A DNA stretch of 64,000 bases, taken from the NCBI GenBank assembly GCA_950097015.1, contig CATNEN010000007.1:620001-684000 (forward strand). Reading direction: 5' to 3'. The stretch is from Macrostomum hystrix. Lineage: Eukaryota; Animalia; Platyhelminthes. The translations under genes were made by a program, and so were the position numbers. The notes beneath the pieces are model-generated. The model was not told where the DNA came from, did not search any database, and was given only the letters and a program-made list of their open reading frames with translations. Positions 46,390 through 59,330 of the stretch are shown here, piece after piece; the first letter of the stretch is position 1, and every line of letters begins with the position of its first letter.

Positions 46390-49300
46390 CTACAGCTCAT
46401 CGTCTGGCTCGTGGCTGCCGCGGTCGCGTCGGCGACTGTCGTCGTCGCCATCCCGTTGAGCCGAGGCGGAGGCTGAGGACTCCTCATCGTTGGTCTCCAC
46501 TTCCTCGTCGGAGGCCCGGCTAGGCGGAGGCGGAGGGGTTGTTGGCGGTGGGGGCATCGAGTCCACGTCCTCCGCTACTGGCGGCTTTTCTGTGGAGCCC
46601 GACTGCTGCTGCTTCTGCTGCTCCTGATCATTGGTGGTCGATTCTGAATCGGCCTTCTTATCACCTTCGGCACCTAAAATAATATTAGTAGAGCCCACAT
46701 GTTTTCACATTGTTTCACTTCAGTTATCCCATGCCTGTCTAATCCCTAATTCCCAATCCCATGCCTGTCAATTCCCTGATTCCCTATCCATGCCTGTCAA
46801 TTCCCTGATTCCCTATCCATGCCTGTCTAATCCATAATTCCCAATCCCATGCCTGTCAATTCTCTGATTCCATACCCATGCCTGTCTTCTCCTTAATTCC
46901 CAATCCCATGCCTGTCTTCTCCTTAATTCCCAATCCCATGCCTGTCTTCTCCCTAATTCCCAATCGCATGCCTGTCAATTCCCTGATTCCCTATCCATGC
47001 CTGTCTTAATTAATTCCCAATCCCATGCTTGTCAATTCTCTGATTCCCTATCCATGCCTGTCTTCTCCCTCATTCCCAATCCCATGCCTGTCTTATCTCT
47101 AATTCCCAATCCCATGCCTGTCTTCTCCCTGATTCCAAATCCCAAGACTGCCTTCATAAAGTTTCCAAAATCCCATGCCTACCTTCTGCCTAACTCACAA
47201 TCCCAAGACTGCCTTCTCCACACCTCGAAAGTTCATATCCCCACTGCTTCCTCTTATTCATATAAAAAGTAAAATCCCAAAAAGAGTGGAATGCACTAAA
47301 AATAAAAAATAAAAGAATAAACCCAGGCCTTGAATTGAAATCGAATGAAAATAATAATTAATCTCAAGACGAAAAATTCGGCGTTCAATACGCACAACAG
47401 CCAACTAGCCTACTATAAGTAGGCAGAGCTGCGATTAAAACCACCCGTTCAAAAATAATTATCCACCCAAATGTCAAATCCGACAAGAAAAAGAGAAAGA
47501 AAAACCTTTTCATATAGGAAACACAAAGGAATGAAGAGAGGACAATGGCAGCATTCGGGAAGCTGATTAAGGGAGTTGGGGGTACAGCACACCCGTTCTT
47601 CCAGCTGACAGCTCTCGCATGATGGCGGCTCGCAGCATCATCTCGCGCAGTCGGCGCCTGTCCCTGGCACCCAGCCGGTAGCTGCCGTCGGCGCCGGCGC
47701 GGATAAATCTGCCTCGGCGCCTACGACTGGCCTCGGCCTTAGCCCTAGCCTTGGCCTTGTCAGCCCTAGCCCTAGCCTTAGCCTCGGCTTTGGCGCGCGC
47801 CTCGGTTTCAAGCTTGAGCTTGGCGTCTGCGGCCTCCCGCCTCTGCTTCTCCAGCTCGGCGGCGCGAGCCAGCTTGTCTCGGAGCAGCTGGCCTAGGCGA
47901 GCCTTCAAGCCTTCGCCGCGTAGAGAGATCTCTGCCGCGGTGACTGTTGGCGGCTCGTGTGCCGGTCTTTCAGCCAGCAACCGCTCCGATTGGTTCACCC
48001 ACAACTGAGCCGGGGGAGCAGAGAGCAAAAGAGAGGAGGAGCGAGATTGTGAAATAAGAGCAGAGAAAATTTTAATTGAAAAACTTTAATTGAAAACAGA
48101 AAAAAGGGTGTAAAAATAATTCCGGAAAATATACGATCATATTTTTTCGCGAAAATTTAAGAAGCAACAGACAGGGCCATAAATCCTAAGAATCGAGTAG
48201 CGAAACCGTTCGACCGTTCGTCCCGACATTCCAGCTGTTCAGTCAGCCACGCTGGTGCTGCTGCTGAAATGCGCAACTCACCGTCTTCAGTCTTTGGCGA
48301 CTTGGGCGGAGGCGGCGGCGTTTTAGGCGTGGGCGGCACGTAGTACTTGATCTTGCCCAGGAGGTAGCTGATCTCGCGTTCCAGTGCGGACATTTTCAGT
48401 TTCAAATCTTCAACCCGAACCAGCGGCTTCTTGGTGAGGTCCTGACTGTCCACCTCAGTCTGCCTGGCTATGCGCCAGTCCTTTTGTTATTAGTTTTTAT
48501 TCGATTTTTAGTTGTTTAAAATTGTAATACATGTATTTCTTAGGAAATGTAAGGAACTTAAACAAACAACCAGCCGCTCGTGGCAAGTAAAATTCGCACT
48601 AGACTTAAGTAAAATTTACCTCAGTCTCGTTGATGAGGTTGCCTAGAGTAGTGTACTCAGCCTGGGTGAAGACATTGCCTTCCCCAGTCATATTCTGCAT
48701 TGTGTCCCAGAAGGTGCGAGTGTGATTCAGCATATCCTTCAGCATTTTGAACGCTTTTGGACGTTCGATCATCTCGCGGACTCGCAGGTTGAGGTCGGAC
48801 AGCATGGTCTTGAGCTCGTTAGTCTTGGCTGTGAATTGCTCTTTCGTAGTGTCCATGCCCTGCTCATCGTACCAGTCCTGTAAAGGTGGAGTGAGTGTGC
48901 ATGCTAGTGTACAATTAGAGCAGGGTTTGGTATAGAGCGAGTAGTACATTGAGGGCAGGGTTTGGTATAGAGCGAGTAGTACATTGAAGGCAGGGTTTGG
49001 TATAGAGCGAGTGTACATTGAGGGCAGAGTTTGGTATAGAGCGAGTGTACATTGAGGGCAGGGTTTGGTATAGAGCGAGTGTACATTGAGGGCAGGGTTT
49101 GGTATAGAGCGAGTACACATTGAGGGCAGGGTTTGGTCTTGAGGGAGTGTACATCGGGCCGATAAACCAACCTGCGCAGCCGAAAGCTTCTCAACGTAGC
49201 CCTGCCGTTCGGCCTCAGTTGAGCACTTCTCATAGTCCGGCAGATTCAGCCTATCCTTGTACTCAAAGATGAGCGCTTCTAATTCGTTGCGAGCCTTCTC

Positions 49301-52300
49301 CAGCAGACGCTTGGCCTCTTCGCGTTGGCGCAACTCTTGAATGCTGCGCGAAATGGACGACATGTGTCTTTGTTATGGTCTTAGTTACAACCTCGCACAG
49401 GATTCCACCGAACTGTTTCGTTGCTACACCAAACTTCGAGTATTATCTGTCCATCACAATATAATTATAACACCTACCAACCACTGCCTGTCACACCTAT
49501 CAACCACTGCCTGTCACACCTATCAACCACTGCCTGTCACACCAGCCTACCACTGCCTGTCACACCAGCCTACCACTGCCTGTCACACCAGCCTACCACT
49601 GTCTGTCACACCAGCCTACCACTGCCTGTCACACCAGCCTACACTGCCTGTCACATCAGCCTACCACTGCCTGTCACACCAGCCTACCACTGCCTGTCAC
49701 ACCAGCCTACACTGCCTGTCACATCAGCCTACCACTGCCTGTCACACCAGCCTACCACTGTCTGTCACACCAGCCTACCACTGCCTGTCACACCAGCCTA
49801 CCACTGCCTGTCACACCAGCCTACCACTGTCTGTCACACCAGCTTACCACTGCCTGTCACACCAGCCTACTACTGCATCTAAACATAAACCTGTCTCTCG
49901 CACTAAAGAGCATATCCTTTGTGTCACGAAAAATAATCTTGCTTACACGCTGCGCGATTTCTGCTGGCTGGCGTCGGACGGGTGAACCAGGGTCTTGTCG
50001 GCCACCACGAATTCGATTGGTTCGCGTCGCAGTTCGGCTTTGGGCTGAACGGAATCGGCAGTCTTGTTCGGTGCGGCCTTGTCGGCGGTGGAGGCATTGG
50101 TTGAGCTGTCGGGCGACTTCTAATGAATGTTTTTCGTTTGCAGAAAGTTAAATTTCTTAAGACTATATTTTCCAGGTTTTCTTATTTATCCTGTTAGTCA
50201 CATCACCAGCTCTCACACCATTCTTCTCATTCCCATCCCTTTCCTTTAATTCTCGCCTCCTTTTCTCTCACTCTCTCTTCATTTCCTCTCACTCACTCTC
50301 CATTTCCTCTCACTCTCTCTCTCCATTTCCTCTCACTCTCTCTCCATTTTCTCTCACTCACTCTCTATTTCCCGTCACTCTCTCTCCATTTCCCTCACTC
50401 TCTATCCTCTCCCATTTCAAGGCCAGACCCACCTGTCCGCCAGCACTATCCTCGGTCTTGGCTTTCTCATCGGCCGATTTTGTCTTTTCCTCGGCAGATT
50501 TGTCCGCCGAGCCATCGCTGCTAGACTCGTCAGTTTTCTGAAATGGCGTTATAATGATTCGAATTCTAAGAAATTGCAGCAGTTTGTAAAACTTCCGGCT
50601 TTTTAGACGTGTTTTTTGGTATTTAGCGTAAATACTCGGTCTTTAAACAGACAATTTCCAAAGTTCTTACACAGTTTTCCTTGCCAATGTAAACGAAAGA
50701 ATCGCAATTACGGTAATAAAGCCTTTAAAAAGTTTAGGCGAGTTGCTAAGCAGCGAATTTCACTCACCTTATCTGAACTGCCAGATCCAAACAGATTACC
50801 AAGCGACTCTCCAATCTCTGTGAAAATGGTTCGAGTAATTGAATTAAACAAAATGAAATGAAACAATATCTCAGAAAGTAAGCGAGAAAAACACCCCCCA
50901 CTCACTGGCAAAGGCCGATCCGTCCTTCTTTTCAGCACCTTCGGCTTCGGCAGCATCGGCTGCTGTTGGCAGTACCTCGAATTGGGCTTCGGTGCGATCC
51001 AGATGCACTATGCCGCTATCGTCCATACGGAAGTGGGCCTTCACGCCTTTGCTAGTGGCTCCTGGTTGGCCATCATACTTGCCAACAGCCTGGGCTACTC
51101 CCTTCAGGTTGAATTTGTACAGCAGCGGATTGCCCAGCGCTCTGCAATCGATGATGATAACTCGTTTATCCAAATGGCTACGTACAGCTTTTCAGTCCAT
51201 GGACTGGGGAGCGTGGAATCGCAACTATTAATAAAAGTGTTGACAACAACTCACTTCTGTTGAAACTCGTTCAAATGATTCAGACTAGTGTAGCTAACGG
51301 AGAAATCGAAATCCTGCGTGTGCTTATTGAAGGTCATGACCTTGCGCTGTGGATAGTGATTGCCCAGATTGAATAGCAGTCGCTTTACATCCTTGCCATC
51401 CTCGGCCGTTTTAAAGTCAACCTGTTATTGGGGAAAGATTTAGAAATTATCGATCGGCTCACATAATGGTGAGAATCGAACTCGTGACCGATTTAGGTTG
51501 GATTTCGATGCATCTAATTAGCGAAATGATTTTACAGCTTATGAAGATTTTCACTGCATCTTACAATAAGAAGAATAAGAAGTGCGTTACAAGTAAACTA
51601 GAAACTCACAGCCAAGGGAAACAGAGTGGCGTCCTTGACAACGAATCGTTTAACTCGAAAACCCGGACTCAGGTGGGCGGCTTGGTAAACGGCGCCCAAT
51701 GCTGCGGCCTCGTCAGTGTTGATTGATTTGCCCAGTTCGCTTCTGGAAGCAGAAAAGAGCAAAATAGTTAAATTTAGCTTCAGTAAGGTAAACTGCTTTT
51801 TGAAGTGTTTTTTTTCTAACCTTCCGGTAGCCTTAAGCAGTGCCGCTTGCACCCGGGGGCTCCTGGTGCCGCCGCCCATCAATAGGACCTCCTTGATCAG
51901 ATCCATTGAGATCTGGGCCATGTTCAGGGCGCTCTCAATCGGCCTAGTGACGCGTTCGAACAGATCCGAGCAGATAACCTCCAGATCATCGCGAGTCACC
52001 TTGATCTTGAAGTCTTTGTCGTCGAAAACGCTTTCAATCTGATGGTGTTGAATTTTTTTATAAAGAAAAGTGATGACTGATTGTTAATATTTAATTGTTC
52101 TGCCCATGATGTCCAATCGGCTGATTGTTTCTCAAATCAGGGGATGGCTTGGGGGCTTGTCGTGCAATTTACACCCTTGAGGGCCAACCTCTAAGGCAAA
52201 GTGAGAGTGTAGACTGCGTGACGATGAGAATGTCAGGGCAGATGTATACACCTGTGTGAGCGCGTGCCTGGATACAGTATCTGTGTGCGTGTGTGCTCTG

Positions 52301-55520: not shown

Positions 55521-55959
55521 GTATGATAAAGTTGTTAGAATCTCTTTCATATGTTTGCCAAAAATGTTACCAAGGATTATTGCAGCACATGAGTGCTTTA
55601 TTCAAGTCAGCATGATGCAAAAATACAGGAAAAAAAACCATGCGGTGAAAGATTTATACGTCGTTCAACACTAAACACTTTAGGTACTCGTACAACTCAC
55701 GCTGCAGTTTGAACATGTTATGCTGAGTGTTTGTTGTGTCCCTCACTTTATAACGCTGTTTTGGTTTTCTATCTGATTTGCAAACGGGAGAAACTTTCTC
55801 AGAAAGTCGATTATTTCACTTTCCATGCAGCTTACAGTAACTGCACCTGGAAACATTAAGTAGATAACTGTGAATTAGTTTTTAGTCTCTTTTCCTATCA
55901 AAAAGTTCAGAATTTTATGCGAATAAATTGCACTAAACAGGTAGACTTTAATGTTCCAA

Positions 55960-57572
55960 AGTACTGGAACATAAACGCCCTGGAGGCAACCCATTGGTCT
56001 TCGGGACAACCACCCACTATTTCGACGTGCCGACAAGCTGATCCGTGTGCGCGACTGTTTTAACAGAAACGCTAACCGCCGCCTTCGAGGCATCCTGTGC
56101 CTTAAAAGCCTACAAAGGGAAAAATCTGCGCCGTGGTGGAACCCTGAGCTCGGCAACTTGCGTCGCAGAGCGAAGAAATTACACCGTAGAGCAAGCAAAA
56201 CTAATTAAAGAGCCATGCGGATCAGACCTCCTATTTTGAAGCCATTCATGAGTTTAAGAGGGAGATCAGGACTGCTAAGGCCCAGAAGTGGCATCAATAC
56301 TGCGAAGATCTAGAAGGCTCACACACCACCTCCAGGATTGTCAAAGCACTTACGCTAAACAAAATGTCCAAGCTCTCCTCGGTGAATCGAAGCGACGGTA
56401 CGTCAACTGACAACCCAGAAGAAATGCTAGAGGTCATGCTCTCTGCTTTCTTTCCCCAACGAGCCAGCCAATCCGACCACCCCAGATCACACTGAGGGAG
56501 GCCATATGCTTGCTGCCTCTATCATCACGGAGGACCGCATCGTCAAAGCGGCCACCTCCTTAGAGAGGCGTTTAAATGCCCAGGTTTCCTGCGCATTCTT
56601 TGCAGCCTCTATCGAGCCTATATCACGCTCGGGTACGTCCCGCAGGCATGGACCGAGGCGAAGGTGATTTTTATCCCGAAGCCAGGCCGCCCGGACTACC
56701 AGTCCATTAAATCCTTCAGACCATCTGCCTTTTTATTGGTCTGAAGGTGCAGGTTAACCACCTTAACTTATCCATCAGGTTATCCATCAGGTTATCAGCT
56801 TATCCATCAGGTTAAGCTGATGGAGAGACTAGACTAGTGCTTCTCTCAGTGGAATTGAAGAACACGCCGCTCAGCGACAACCAGCATGCTTTTTGGGCGG
56901 GTCGCTCCACTGAAAGCGCGTTGCACGTTCTGATTGACAATTCTGGAGAAAGCTGTGCTTGGCAACAGCTTCGCTCGAAGTGTCTTCCTGGACATTGATG
57001 GTGCCTTTGACAACGTCCTCTTTGACGCGTTCCGCAAAGTCCTATGTAAGAGACACACTCACTCGAACCTGACCAGATGGATCATGCATATGATCAGTCA
57101 TCGCATGGGCACCGCCAGCCTGCTGGGCCACCAACGGACGGTCCCATTCCGCAAAGAAAGCCCGCAGGGAGGGGTCTCTCCTATTCTCTGGATCGAACAT
57201 TGGAACGCCCTGGAGAACGCAAGGGCGCGCATGTCGCATGTCCATGAGTGCCCCTCCGTCTGCTCCTTACGACGGCCTCAATGCCTTCATCGACGTTCCC
57301 CCGTTGGACATTTTTGCCCGCATGGAAGCCGCTAAAACAGCGCATCGGCTCATTGATGCCGGCGTCCGCTTCACGCCGCAAAGAGCCATAGCAAAGCGCA
57401 AGCTTCTGCCTTACGCCGACCTGTACCTTAGAGATTTGAAAGACAGCGGCGGACTCCACGTCTTATCTGACGGCGAACCACGCACTCTCAATCTCACCCA
57501 GCGCTACAAAAACACCACCCACCACCCAGAACCACCAGGAGGTCCACTGCTATACGGACGGATCCCTTAAAG
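55960..57572 (+). pseudogene. Decayed non-LTR retrotransposon (RT + RNase H; LOA/R1/Lian-like), frameshifted and internally deleted
   Basis: Fragments across frames: PWWNPELGNLRRR, QAWTEAKVIFIPKPGRPDY..KSFRP, SVFLDIDGAFDNV, PQGGV, GLYVPPLD-like LNAFIDVPPLDIF and terminal CYTDGS (start of RNase H). Confidence 0.82.
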
Positions 57573-58601
57573 ACGACATAATAATCGGAACGAATCGTGG
57601 GAATCATGGTCTTCAATGTTCATAGGTTCTAGGTAGGTAAGCCCGATACACAAAGCTACCCTTTACAATTACAGCACTCATTATAATTTTTTGCTTATTT
57701 GTTGATCATTTTTTTTAATTCATGCACAACCTATTTCCTTCGATGCTTGATGAAAACTTATTGTCGTAAGTATATTTATTGACAGAATTGACAGACTAGG
57801 GTAAAAACTATGAAATAAATGAAAAAAGATTGCAAATTTCACTTGTAATTCATACTTAAATATATAACGATGAATGGTAGTTTTTAAAACATCGTATTTC
57901 TCAGCGTCAATTACATAAAAGGAACCACTTTGTCATCGTAGAAAGTATAGAAAAAAGCGATATTTAAGGCGATGTTAGCCATTGTGCAAGAATGCAAACC
58001 CCCGAGATCATTTAAGTCAATCCATTAAGTGCAATACAAAATTGGCCAGTTTATGTTCGCATGGAAGCTATAGCATGCAATAAAAAGTGGCAAAAGACAT
58101 GAATGACACAGAGTTGTTCTACTGCTTACACAATCACCGCCTTGCTACTCCAAATTCCGGGCGCCTTGGCCAATTTACCTACTCCAGCGTGCTTTCAACT
58201 AAGATGGGTATTGGTGCTTGAGTCCGCCAGCTGAAGCCGGTGACGACCAATCTCCACAGCGCAGCGGCACAAAATTAGTATCGGGGGCTCGATTCCAAGG
58301 GCTTAGTTAAGGCGCACGTGGGACTAAGAAAGCGGAATGCTTCTGTGCCAGAGCAACTGTTATTGCTTAGAGTAGCTGGACACAGTTGCGCCCACAGTCG
58401 CGACATCTGCGGAACTGAATTCAAAGACTGCAGAGTCCTCTGCAGTTGATGCGGCGGCTGCAACTGCTGTTGTTGTTGTTGCTGTTGTTGTTGCTGCTGC
58501 TGCTGTTGTTGCTTCTGCTGTTGCTGCTAATTAATCTGCTGTTGCCGCTTCTGGTGCTGCTGGTGCTGCTGCTGGTGCTGCTGCTGGTGCTACTGCTGGT
58601 G

Positions 58602-59330
58602 CTACTGCTTTGGCCACAGAGTGATGTATAGCTGCCGCTGCTGCTGCTGCCGCTGCCGCTGCCGCTTCAGCTGCTGCTGCCGCCGCCGCTCCTGCTGCAG
58701 CTGCTGCTGCTGCTGCAGCTGCTTCTGAAGTTGCTGCTGCTGCTGCTGCTTCTGAAGTTGCTGCTGCTGCTGCTGCTGCTTCTGCAGTTGTAGCTTGTAT
58801 TGCTTCTGCTGCTTTAATAGCACTTGCTGCTGCTCTTCCTGCCTAAATAGTTGTTGCTGCTGTTGTTCCTGTTCTTGCTTATGTAGTTGCTCCTGCTCTT
58901 GTTGGTGTTGCTTTTTGTATGATTGCAGCTGCTGCTGTTGCTTGTATAGTTGATGGTGATGGTGTTGCATATTATTTTCCTGTTGCTGTTGCTGGTGTGG
59001 CTGCTGTTGAATGTAAAGTTGCTTCTGCTGCAGTGGCGGCAACTTCTGATAAAATGTCGTGCCTCTTGCCGTCATCAAGATAGGCTTGTTTGCCACGAGT
59101 AGATTATAATTGCTAGTAGAACTCAAACCATTGCTCACGTTATCACGCTTCTTCCAGCCGTCCTGAATAACCGTGTCACAGATGACTTGCCAGAGCTCGC
59201 GATGGTAGTGCAGCTTGGCTTGCACGATTTTGTCTCGCAACGGCTGCAGGTCCACGCCTAGATCGATCACTGAGCCAAAAGTTGCACATCTTGGAACGCA
59301 GATTAACATGTTGCCTATGTCGGCTTCCAT
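58602..59330 (-). CDS. Unknown ORF with unique N-terminus and long polyQ tract; the frame continues past TAG codons to 58275
   Basis: 242-aa ATG-initiated ORF, with ~100 aa of non-repetitive sequence followed by CAG/CAA repeats. No recognisable domain. Confidence 0.35.
   Translation of the reverse strand: MEADIGNMLICVPRCATFGSVIDLGVDLQPLRDKIVQAKLHYHRELWQVICDTVIQDGWKKRDNVSNGLSSTSNYNLLVANKPILMTARGTTFYQKLPPLQQKQLYIQQQPHQQQQQENNMQHHHHQLYKQQQQLQSYKKQHQQEQEQLHKQEQEQQQQQLFRQEEQQQVLLKQQKQYKLQLQKQQQQQQQLQKQQQQQQLQKQLQQQQQLQQERRRQQQLKRQRQRQQQQRQLYITLWPKQ

What the first reader, a model, noticed from the sequence alone, without database searches (positions are those of the whole stretch)
47567..48480. 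HYOU1/GRP170 has a duplicated, alternative terminal exon that drops the ER-retention signal
Seen: downstream of canonical exon 18 lies a GC-rich 145-codon exon with a good acceptor in phase 0. It is compatible with exon 17, but not with the phase-1 end of exon 18. Its first ~45 aa parallel exon 18 and the recalled human segment (W...A..P..E.P.+...I......L...+..LL.K). It then continues into an Ala/Lys/Arg-rich helix and RRRRGR, ending VLYPQLP rather than DDEL. Established: KDEL-like tails retain GRP170 in the ER. Inference: mutually exclusive splicing yields a secreted or relocalised, highly basic GRP170 isoform.
Basis: partly seen in the sequence, partly recalled or inferred. Interest (0 to 1): 0.7.

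Follow-up and report, generated by a model that had tools for sequence, protein, structure and literature searches.

The report
Swappable exon pair in flatworm GRP170
A Macrostomum flatworm's ER chaperone gene HYOU1/GRP170 has two versions of one exon, used one at a time; the rarer one replaces the last helix of the tail domain with a long, very basic helix, but both keep the ER-retention signal, so the proposed secreted form is not supported.

Summary
The ORF is real, and spliced RNA contigs from four samples of one study show that it is expressed. The exon runs 48004-47593 (412 nt, phase 0 to 1) and ends at a CGG|GTGTGC donor. The last 8 codons and the stop at 47567 are intronic.

Contigs join exon 17 (48620) to 48004. 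The letters after 47593 are the start of the PDDEL exon (46673), the same as after canonical exon 18 (48480-48282). So 18a and 18b are mutually exclusive exons. Both have a length of 1 mod 3, so using both or neither breaks the frame. Both isoforms end in PDDEL.

18b is the minor form, about 7-13% by contig word depth. Its first ~40 residues match, in register, a profile of the same segment from HYOU1 orthologues, although 18a and 18b no longer match each other by BLASTP.

All three Macrostomum lignano gene copies carry an intact, unannotated 18b exon in the same intron. Omega is about 0.1 and the introns cannot be aligned.

By modelling, the exon encodes the third helix of a GRP170-specific C-terminal three-helix bundle. 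18b extends it into an ~84-residue charged helix followed by a conserved basic helix.

This is a new member of a known kind. The secreted-isoform claim is not supported.

The parts
48620..48880 (-). It ends in phase 0 with ...INETE and a GAG|GTAAAT donor, which serves both alternative acceptors.
   Evidence: Contig pieces and joints. The upstream loose letters map to 49175-49204. 87% aa identity to M. lignano P0151 residues 747-833.
48282..48480 (-). Exon 18a, the major form: 199 nt, phase 0 to 1, donor GACG|GTGAGT. It encodes the end of the second helix, a loop, the third helix of the C-terminal bundle (the [15 protein letters not shown] motif) and a Pro/Lys-rich linker.
   Evidence: Joint 48620>48480 in all 4 runs, word depth 57-77. 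50.6 bits against the orthologue HMM. Position in the AF2 model of P0151:600-900.
47593..48004 (-). Exon 18b, the minor form: 412 nt, phase 0 to 1, acceptor ...CCCCGGCTCAG|TTG, donor AACGG|GTGTGC. It encodes a diverged copy of the same segment. That runs on into an ~84-residue Ala/Lys/Arg/Glu helix, an RRRRG motif and a conserved basic helix ([16 protein letters not shown]).
   Evidence: Joint 48620>48004 (X1, X2). Loose end after 47593 equals the exon 19 start (X1-X3). Profile homology. Conserved in three M. lignano loci. Omega about 0.1. AF2 helices 23-106 and 113-133.
47567..47592 (-). The ORF continues past the donor for 8 codons plus TAA. This is intron, not part of the observed mRNA.
   Evidence: No contig coverage beyond the three letters shared with exon 19. 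Conservation with M. lignano stops exactly at the G|GT.
48005..48281 (-). Intron between 18a and 18b, 277 nt, so too long for steric exclusion. It carries the CT-rich tract in front of 18b.
   Evidence: Not alignable with M. lignano. In run X3 one contig (47977-48141) reads from 18b into this intron.
46674..47592 (-). Intron between 18b and the last coding exon. It holds a ~30-nt minisatellite at about 46750-47250.
   Evidence: repetitive ORFs. Skipped in the contigs.
46390..46673 (-). Last coding exon, entered in phase 1. It encodes an acidic, Pro-rich tail ending PDDEL and TAG. It is shared by both isoforms.
   Evidence: Sequence. The 26 loose letters after both 18a and 18b map uniquely to 46645-46670. 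The end is 97% identical in DNA to M. lignano.

Best explanation
Exons 18a (48480-48282) and 18b (48004-47593) of a Macrostomum HYOU1/GRP170 gene are a tandem-duplicated, mutually exclusive pair.

Shown:
- Each is spliced between the same exon 17 donor (48620) and the same acceptor of the last coding exon (46673).
- Both start in phase 0 and end in phase 1.
- Both isoforms therefore read through to the C-terminal PDDEL ER-retrieval signal.

Follows from the sequence: both lengths (199 and 412 nt) are 1 mod 3. Including both gives a stop 11 codons into 18b. Skipping both shifts the frame of the last exon. Only one-at-a-time products are productive, so exclusivity is enforced by the reading frame and probably by NMD.

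Shown by contig depth, roughly: 18b is the minor form, about a tenth of transcripts in whole-sample RNA.

Shown by comparison: 18b is an old, selected coding exon. It is intact in all three M. lignano gene copies, nonsynonymous change is about a tenth of synonymous change, and the introns have diverged beyond alignment.

Inferred from AF2 models:
- The exon encodes the end of helix 2, the loop and helix 3 of a three-helix bundle that GRP170 carries beyond the Hsp70/Hsp110 lid.
- 18a ends that helix after ~23 residues and continues into a Pro/Lys-rich linker.
- 18b keeps the helix start but extends it into an ~84-residue rigid charged helix of variable length, followed by a strongly conserved basic amphipathic helix.

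Inferred function: an ER-lumenal GRP170 variant whose C-terminal (client-holding or partner-binding) module is remodelled. The basic module is held away from the chaperone body and sits next to the acidic tail. This changes client or partner specificity, not localisation.
For: -: spliced contigs in 4 runs of one study. Joint 48620>48004 in X1 and X2 (471-nt contig, word depth 8.3 and 8.7). Joint 48620>48480 in all four (depth 57-77). Identical 26-letter loose ends after 47593 (X1-X3) and after 48282 (X1-X4).
- those letters occur once in the window, at 46645-46670, the exon 19 start. The 18b share is 0.07-0.13. There is no poly(A) signal after the ORF stop.
- coordinates, phases, lengths mod 3, and the consequences of including both exons or neither.
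- 18b residues 2-41 are homologous, in register, to the segment encoded by 18a in 27-42 orthologues.
- M. lignano P0151, P0174 and P0176 are all annotated as the 18a form ending PDDEL. Each locus has an intact 18b ORF about 1 kb downstream of 18a, with in-frame indels only in the Ala/Lys repeat.
- window against L001 for 18b gives pS 0.69, pN 0.165, omega about 0.1. For comparison, 18a gives 0.15 and exon 17 gives 0.03.
- DNA similarity between the two species is confined to exons 17, 18a, 18b and the end of exon 19.
- helix predictions. Lid matches (BiP Z 12.3, Sse1 Z 9.7) cover only model residues 79-191, and residues 175-281 form a further three-helix bundle whose last helix is encoded by 18a.
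Against: - All RNA evidence is from assembled contigs of one study. Contigs cannot show absence of rare forms such as read-through, both-exon or skipped products, and depth is a poor measure of isoform ratio.
- In run X3 the 5' end of 18b is joined to intron sequence (contig 47977-48141), not to exon 17. Some 18b-containing RNA is therefore unspliced or differently processed.
- In X4 only the exon interior is covered.
- Use of 18b in M. lignano is not shown by RNA, and its candidate donor (CTG|GTTGCT) is weak.
- 18a and 18b show no direct pairwise similarity. Duplication rests on profile matches of modest strength (18 bits; hhalign probability 32%) plus position and phase.
- The function is inferred only. 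The structural mapping uses the M. lignano 18a protein and an isolated 18b peptide, not a full-length isoform b.
Confidence: 0.85

Rival explanations
1. 18b is an alternative terminal exon. Transcripts read through to the TAA at 47567 and are polyadenylated, giving a GRP170 without DDEL that is secreted or relocalised.
For: The ORF does stay open for 8 codons past the donor to a stop. Contigs cannot exclude a rare read-through form (notes).
Against: - In three runs the 18b contig continues without a branch into exon 19. There is zero contig depth over 47290-47559.
- No AATAAA or ATTAAA lies within 660 nt of the stop.
- Protein and DNA conservation with M. lignano ends exactly at the G|GT donor. 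In M. lignano the frame stays open for at least the 22 further codons read, with unrelated residues and no stop.
Confidence: 0.03
2. 18b is a relic of an exon duplication that is spliced in as noise. The isoform has no function of its own.
For: It is the minor form, about 10% by depth. No hit in Pfam, PDB or the word search. Half of it is low-complexity Ala/Lys repeat that varies in length between copies.
Against: - The ORF is intact and the phase kept in four loci of two lineages that are near saturation at synonymous sites (pS 0.69), with pN 0.165.
- The last 44 residues are about 90% identical.
- Introns are not alignable, while 18b is 70-80% identical in DNA.
- Codon GC3 equals that of the constitutive exons.
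Confidence: 0.07
3. The 18b ORF belongs to an independent transcript nested in the HYOU1 intron, for example one with its own promoter or a trans-spliced unit. It is not part of HYOU1 mRNA.
For: The X3 contig 47977-48141 links 18b to upstream intron sequence and not to exon 17. Trans-splicing is common in Macrostomum (papers listed; not read in detail).
Against: - X1 and X2 contigs join 30 letters of exon 17 directly to 18b, and 18b to exon 19.
- No spliced-leader-like loose end was reported at 48004.
- The frame upstream of 48028 is closed, and 18b has no in-frame ATG before its last 20 codons.
Confidence: 0.03

Closest known systems
HYOU1 / GRP170 / ORP150 (the large ER-lumenal Hsp70-like chaperone and BiP nucleotide-exchange factor) of other animals
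   Same: - The window's exons match HYOU1 proteins along their length. M. lignano P0151 matches at 74-91% per exon over most of the gene.
- The NBD exon matches HYOU1 of molluscs, nemerteans, lancelets and insects.
- The protein ends in PDDEL, like the xDEL/xTEL tails of the orthologues.
- 18a carries the family's conserved last-helix motif (LdREvkYLxNKaK).
   Different: - None of the annotated isoform pairs I compared (Lineus, Branchiostoma, Orussus, Mytilus, Haliotis) differ at this exon.
- From my own knowledge, not checked here: the alternative mammalian HYOU1 forms arise at the 5' end.
- The full-text searches found nothing on mutually exclusive exons in HYOU1 or in Macrostomum. The Macrostomum search had no hits. 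The GRP170 isoform search gave one GRP78 paper. The ten listed of 45 HYOU1 hits looked unrelated by title and were not opened.
- Some orthologues (ostracod P0023, isopod P0044, Strongyloides P0148) carry an Ala/Lys/Glu-rich helix after this motif constitutively. In Macrostomum it is an optional exon.
Mutually exclusive exon pairs from tandem exon duplication, enforced by reading frame (the general class; textbook examples from my own knowledge are the paired exons of tropomyosin and pyruvate kinase M)
   Same: Two neighbouring exons in one intron with the same flanking splice partners and the same phases. They are homologous, with lengths not divisible by three, so including both or neither destroys the frame.
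   Different: - The two exons differ twofold in length (199 and 412 nt) and have lost direct pairwise similarity.
- The extra length is a charged-helix insertion plus a new conserved basic helix.
- No competing RNA-pairing signal was found, only AT-rich inverted matches. The motif I checked is absent just upstream of the M. lignano 18a acceptor.
Hsp110 / Sse1 and the Hsp70 SBD-alpha lid
   Same: The region upstream of the exon superposes on the lid: BiP 6asy Z 12.3, rmsd 1.6 over 99 residues; Sse1 2qxl Z 9.7, rmsd 1.5 over 112 residues.
   Different: The swapped segment lies beyond the part that aligns to these lids (model residues 79-191). It sits in an additional three-helix bundle (model residues 175-281) that matches only generic three-helix bundles.

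Membership tests
HYOU1/GRP170 gene | Hsp70-type nucleotide-binding domain | tested here: met
   The window exon 52685-52428 matches the NBDs of Hsp105, Sse1 and BiP in the PDB. Its best database relatives are named hypoxia up-regulated protein 1. Pfam HSP70 covers residues 27-624 of the M. lignano orthologue P0151, E 9e-89.
HYOU1/GRP170 gene | C-terminal helical region specific to HYOU1 (Pfam HYOU1_C, PF27508) | tested here: inconclusive
   PF27508 is listed in the precomputed hits for P0151 and all relatives. It is not in the Pfam copy I could scan. Exon 17 and 18a do align to the orthologues over this region.
HYOU1/GRP170 gene | ER-retrieval tetrapeptide (K/H/x-DEL type) at the C-terminus | tested here: met
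   The last coding exon ends ...HEPDDEL, TAG at 46390-46392. The same tail is found in M. lignano.
HYOU1/GRP170 gene | N-terminal signal peptide | not tested
   P0151 starts with a hydrophobic stretch, but the window's first exon was not delimited.
Mutually exclusive exon pair | Each exon is joined in RNA to the same upstream and downstream exons | tested here: met
   Joints 48620>48480 and 48620>48004. Identical exon 19 letters follow 48282 and 47593.
Mutually exclusive exon pair | The exons are homologous (tandem duplication) with the same phases | tested here: met
   Phase 0 to 1 for both. 18b is in register with the orthologue profile of the 18a segment: 18.1 bits with 0 of 2000 shuffles reaching it, and hhalign E 4.9e-4. 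Direct BLASTP is negative.
Mutually exclusive exon pair | Mature mRNAs never hold both exons or neither | tested here: inconclusive
   No 48282>48004 joint and no exon-17-to-exon-19 loose end was reported. Contigs drop rare variants. Both forms would be out of frame.
   Contigs leave at 47593 for exon 19. Depth is 0 over 47290-47559. No poly(A) hexamer. No conservation after the donor.

The most novel reading that the evidence does not exclude
Isoform b could still end up outside the ER, by proteolysis and not by splicing. A conserved polybasic site (RRRR-G in the window, KRRR-G in all three M. lignano copies) lies between the charged stalk and the last conserved helix, upstream of the acidic DDEL tail. 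If a proprotein convertase cuts there, the chaperone body would be freed from its retrieval signal. That would give a regulated secreted GRP170. A less radical version: the stalk plus basic helix tethers a subpopulation of GRP170 to the ER membrane or to acidic lumenal partners.
Probability: 0.06. Interest if true: 0.65.

Novelty: new member of a known kind. Interest (0 to 1): 0.35.

Why it matters
GRP170 is the main large chaperone and BiP exchange factor of the ER. The role of its C-terminal helical region and tail is poorly defined.

A naturally selected isoform switch, conserved in at least two Macrostomum lineages, swaps one helix of the GRP170-specific C-terminal bundle. It adds a rigid charged stalk and a basic helix. 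That gives a ready-made pair of variants for asking what this region does.

The finding also adds an unannotated coding exon to three M. lignano gene models.

It corrects the more striking claim of a secreted, retention-signal-free isoform: both forms keep PDDEL.

Tried and rejected
- BLASTP of 18a against 18b: no alignment. MAFFT of the two exons' DNA was not meaningful.
- Pfam on 18a, 18b and exon 17: nothing near the cut-offs, and the same for the M. lignano 18b.
- PDB sequence search with exon 17, 18a and 18b: only chance coiled-coil hits.
- Word-index protein search with 18b (candidates of 75-240 aa only): no hit. This says nothing about full-length proteins.
- Competing RNA pairing (docking/selector) as the exclusivity mechanism:
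  - Only AT-rich inverted matches were found, between the 18a acceptor region and the intron after 18b.
  - Such pairing would loop out both exons.
  - The motif is absent just upstream of the M. lignano 18a acceptor, and no intron sequence is conserved. Rejected.
- Steric exclusion: rejected, because the intervening intron is 277 nt.
- A third exon copy in the window: none by tblastn.
- The bacterial promoter/terminator scan is irrelevant to a eukaryotic gene.
- Literature searches for Macrostomum plus mutually exclusive exons, GRP170 isoforms plus KDEL, and HYOU1 plus mutually exclusive gave nothing pertinent. A review opened for GRP170's C-terminal domain held nothing usable.
- Foldseek of the C-terminal model against the PDB gave no E<=0.001 hit. 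The VIA re-alignment was used instead.
No full-length isoform-b sequence was searched, folded or looked up.
Full report
**What is there**

The minus strand of the window carries a HYOU1/GRP170 gene from about 54300 down to 46390.
- tblastn of the M. lignano protein P0151 finds its exons at 74-91% identity over most of the gene.
- A nucleotide-binding-domain exon (52685-52428) matches Hsp105, Sse1 and BiP in the PDB.
- Its nearest database relatives are named hypoxia up-regulated protein 1.

The 3' part of the gene has these pieces:

| Piece | Coordinates | Notes |
|---|---|---|
| Exon 18, here 18a | 48480-48282 | 199 nt, phase 0 to 1 |
| Last coding exon | 46673-46390 | entered in phase 1, ends PDDEL-TAG |

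**Organism**

- Earlier notes of this scan call the genome a Macrostomum flatworm.
- I confirmed that its closest named relative is M. lignano.
- The window is only 87% identical in protein to M. lignano over exon 17, and synonymous sites are near saturation.
- Only one M. lignano HYOU1 cluster turned up.
- So the window is most likely from another Macrostomum species, or less likely an old paralogue.

**RNA evidence**

One search for runs holding 47450-48004 gave four runs of one study, with coded ids and library type not recorded. Their contigs lie on exons only and skip introns with GT..AG ends, so they are RNA-derived.

*Junctions at the 5' end of 18b*
- In X1 and X2 a 471-nt contig holds 30 letters of exon 17, then 48004-47590, then 26 further letters.

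*Junctions at the 3' end of 18b*
- The 26 letters are identical to those that follow 18a at 48282 in all four runs.
- They occur once in the window, at 46645-46670. That is bases 4-29 of the last coding exon.
- The first three bases, GTG, are the same in the intron after both donors. This is why the aligner ran on to 47590 and 48279.
- So 18b ends at 47593, at a CGG|GTGTGC donor, and is spliced to 46673 in phase 1, as 18a is. X3 shows the same 3' junction.

*What these contigs are*
- These short contigs are the two arms of a graph bubble: exon 17, then 18a or 18b, then exon 19.
- Junction-spanning 31-mers must exist in the reads for such contigs to form, so they are not assembly chimeras.

*Read-through and abundance*
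- Nothing covers 47567-47589 or 47290-47559, and no poly(A) hexamer follows the ORF's stop.
- Word depth is 6-8.7 for 18b and 57-77 for 18a, a share of 7-13%. This is a rough figure.

**Why the exons are mutually exclusive**

- Both lengths are 1 mod 3.
- Reading 18a into 18b gives ...[15 protein letters not shown]-stop, well upstream of the last junction. That is a likely NMD target.
- Skipping both shifts the last exon's frame.
- No joint for either form was reported, though contigs cannot show absence.
- The 277-nt intron rules out steric exclusion.
- I found no credible competing RNA pairing.
- Frame-enforced exclusivity is therefore the most likely mechanism. This is an inference.

**Is 18b a duplicate of 18a?**

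- Directly, no similarity is left.
- Weak BLASTP hits of 18b to HYOU1 of Capsaspora (P0096), P0059 and P0046 are all colinear with the exon 17 match at zero offset.
- An HMM of the 52 residues after the exon-17 equivalent was built from 27 orthologues, without the window's sequences. It scores 18a at 50.6 bits and the 18b N-terminus at 18.1 bits, with residues 2-34 on profile positions 2-34. None of 2000 shuffles exceeds 7.5 bits.
- hhalign of a four-sequence 18b profile against a 42-sequence C-terminal alignment gives a single hit. It places 18b residues 2-41 on the 18a-coded columns, E 4.9e-4.
- Together with the identical phases, identical neighbours and a G|GTG donor in both, tandem duplication is the best reading.
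- 18b keeps an N-glycosylation sequon near its start (NQS; NRS in M. lignano), as many orthologues do. 18a has none.

**Conservation**

- M. lignano (GCA_002269645.1) has three gene copies: PAA74658.1, PAA53296.1 and PAA82630.1. All are annotated as 1000-residue proteins of the 18a form ending PDDEL.
- Each locus (L001-L003) holds an intact 18b ORF about 1 kb after 18a, behind an AG. Indels are in frame and lie only inside the Ala/Lys repeat. A G|GT sits at the aligned exon end, and similarity stops after it.
- Window against L001:

| Exon | pS | pN | omega |
|---|---|---|---|
| 18b | 0.69 | 0.165 | about 0.10 |
| 18a | 0.53 | 0.13 | 0.15 |
| 17 | 0.71 | 0.065 | 0.03 |

  dS is near saturation, so omega is rough.
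- At the DNA level only exons 17, 18a, 18b and the end of exon 19 align. The introns do not.
- The last ~44 residues of 18b ([37 protein letters not shown]) are about 90% identical.
- 18b is thus a selected coding exon, and it is missing from the three M. lignano protein records.
Its candidate donor, CTG|GTTGCT, is weak.

**Where it sits in the protein (model-based)**

- AF2 of P0151:600-900 with 42 orthologues has mean pLDDT 80, and 93-98 over most of the helices.
- Re-alignment to PDB chains puts the Hsp70/Hsp110 lid on model residues 79-191: BiP 6asy Z 12.3, Sse1 2qxl Z 9.7.
- Residues 175-281 form a further antiparallel three-helix bundle that matches only generic bundles.
- 18a, at model residues 235-294, encodes the end of the second helix, the loop, the third helix (257-279) and the start of the disordered Pro/Lys linker.
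- AF2 of the 18b peptide alone (pLDDT 83) predicts a short helix, one unbroken helix over residues 23-106, and a second helix over 113-133.
- So isoform b keeps the bundle's third helix in diverged form. It prolongs that helix by about 60 residues of Ala/Lys/Arg/Glu helix, whose length varies between copies, and adds a conserved basic helix.
- The net charge of the segment is about +18 (pI 11.5), directly before the acidic tail (pI 4.1).
- Some arthropod and nematode HYOU1 proteins have a similar Ala/Lys/Glu helix after this motif constitutively.

**Verdict**

- The exon is internal, both isoforms keep PDDEL, and the secreted or relocalised isoform is not supported.
- The best explanation is a conserved, frame-enforced mutually exclusive exon pair that remodels the GRP170-specific C-terminal bundle. 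Its function is inferred only.
- I found no description of it in the searchable literature, nor in the isoform sets of five other animals.

**Limits**

- All RNA evidence is contigs from one study.
- In X3 a contig (47977-48141) joins 18b to the upstream intron and not to exon 17. This is unexplained, and is probably unspliced precursor.
No search, look-up or fold of a full-length isoform b was made.

Noticed in passing
window 47977-48141 (run X3): A 165-nt contig at depth 6 runs from inside 18b across the 48004 acceptor into the upstream intron. X3 shows no 48620>48004 junction contig. It could be unspliced precursor, intron retention or another 5' end. The frame upstream of 48028 is closed, so it would not extend the protein.
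   Followed up: partly
window 48429: Run X3 reads C where the window has T on the + strand. That changes codon 18 of exon 18a from AAG (Lys) to GAG (Glu). Glu is the residue M. lignano has at this position, so this is a nonsynonymous polymorphism or a strain difference.
   Followed up: partly
window 46750-47250, 48900-49170 and 49400-49900; L001 15950-16330 and 17300-18800: The introns flanking these exons are filled with minisatellites (units of about 22-30 nt) that create long spurious ORFs on both strands. The repeat units differ between the window and M. lignano, although they lie in the corresponding introns.
   Followed up: no
L001 16619-17111, L002 from 11603, L003 from 21092 (M. lignano GCA_002269645.1): All three M. 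lignano HYOU1 copies hold an intact 18b exon. Their annotated proteins (PAA74658.1, PAA53296.1, PAA82630.1) do not include it. The Ala/Lys repeat length differs between the copies by 17-21 codons.
   Followed up: yes
P0162 against P0165 (Mytilus edulis HYOU1 isoforms X1 and X4): The predicted isoform X1 ends ...ILETLTGNL where the other mussel forms end ...KHDPGEL. This is an NCBI prediction only and was not checked against RNA.
   Followed up: no
window 55900-57600: ORFs on both strands include one (56934-57335, + strand) with an FLDIDGAFDNV motif typical of non-LTR retrotransposon reverse transcriptases. It is probably a decayed retroelement upstream of, or within the 5' part of, the HYOU1 locus.
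   Followed up: no
window 58602-59330 (- strand): A 242-aa ORF whose C-terminal two thirds are almost pure Gln-rich low-complexity sequence. Its nature is unknown.
   Followed up: no
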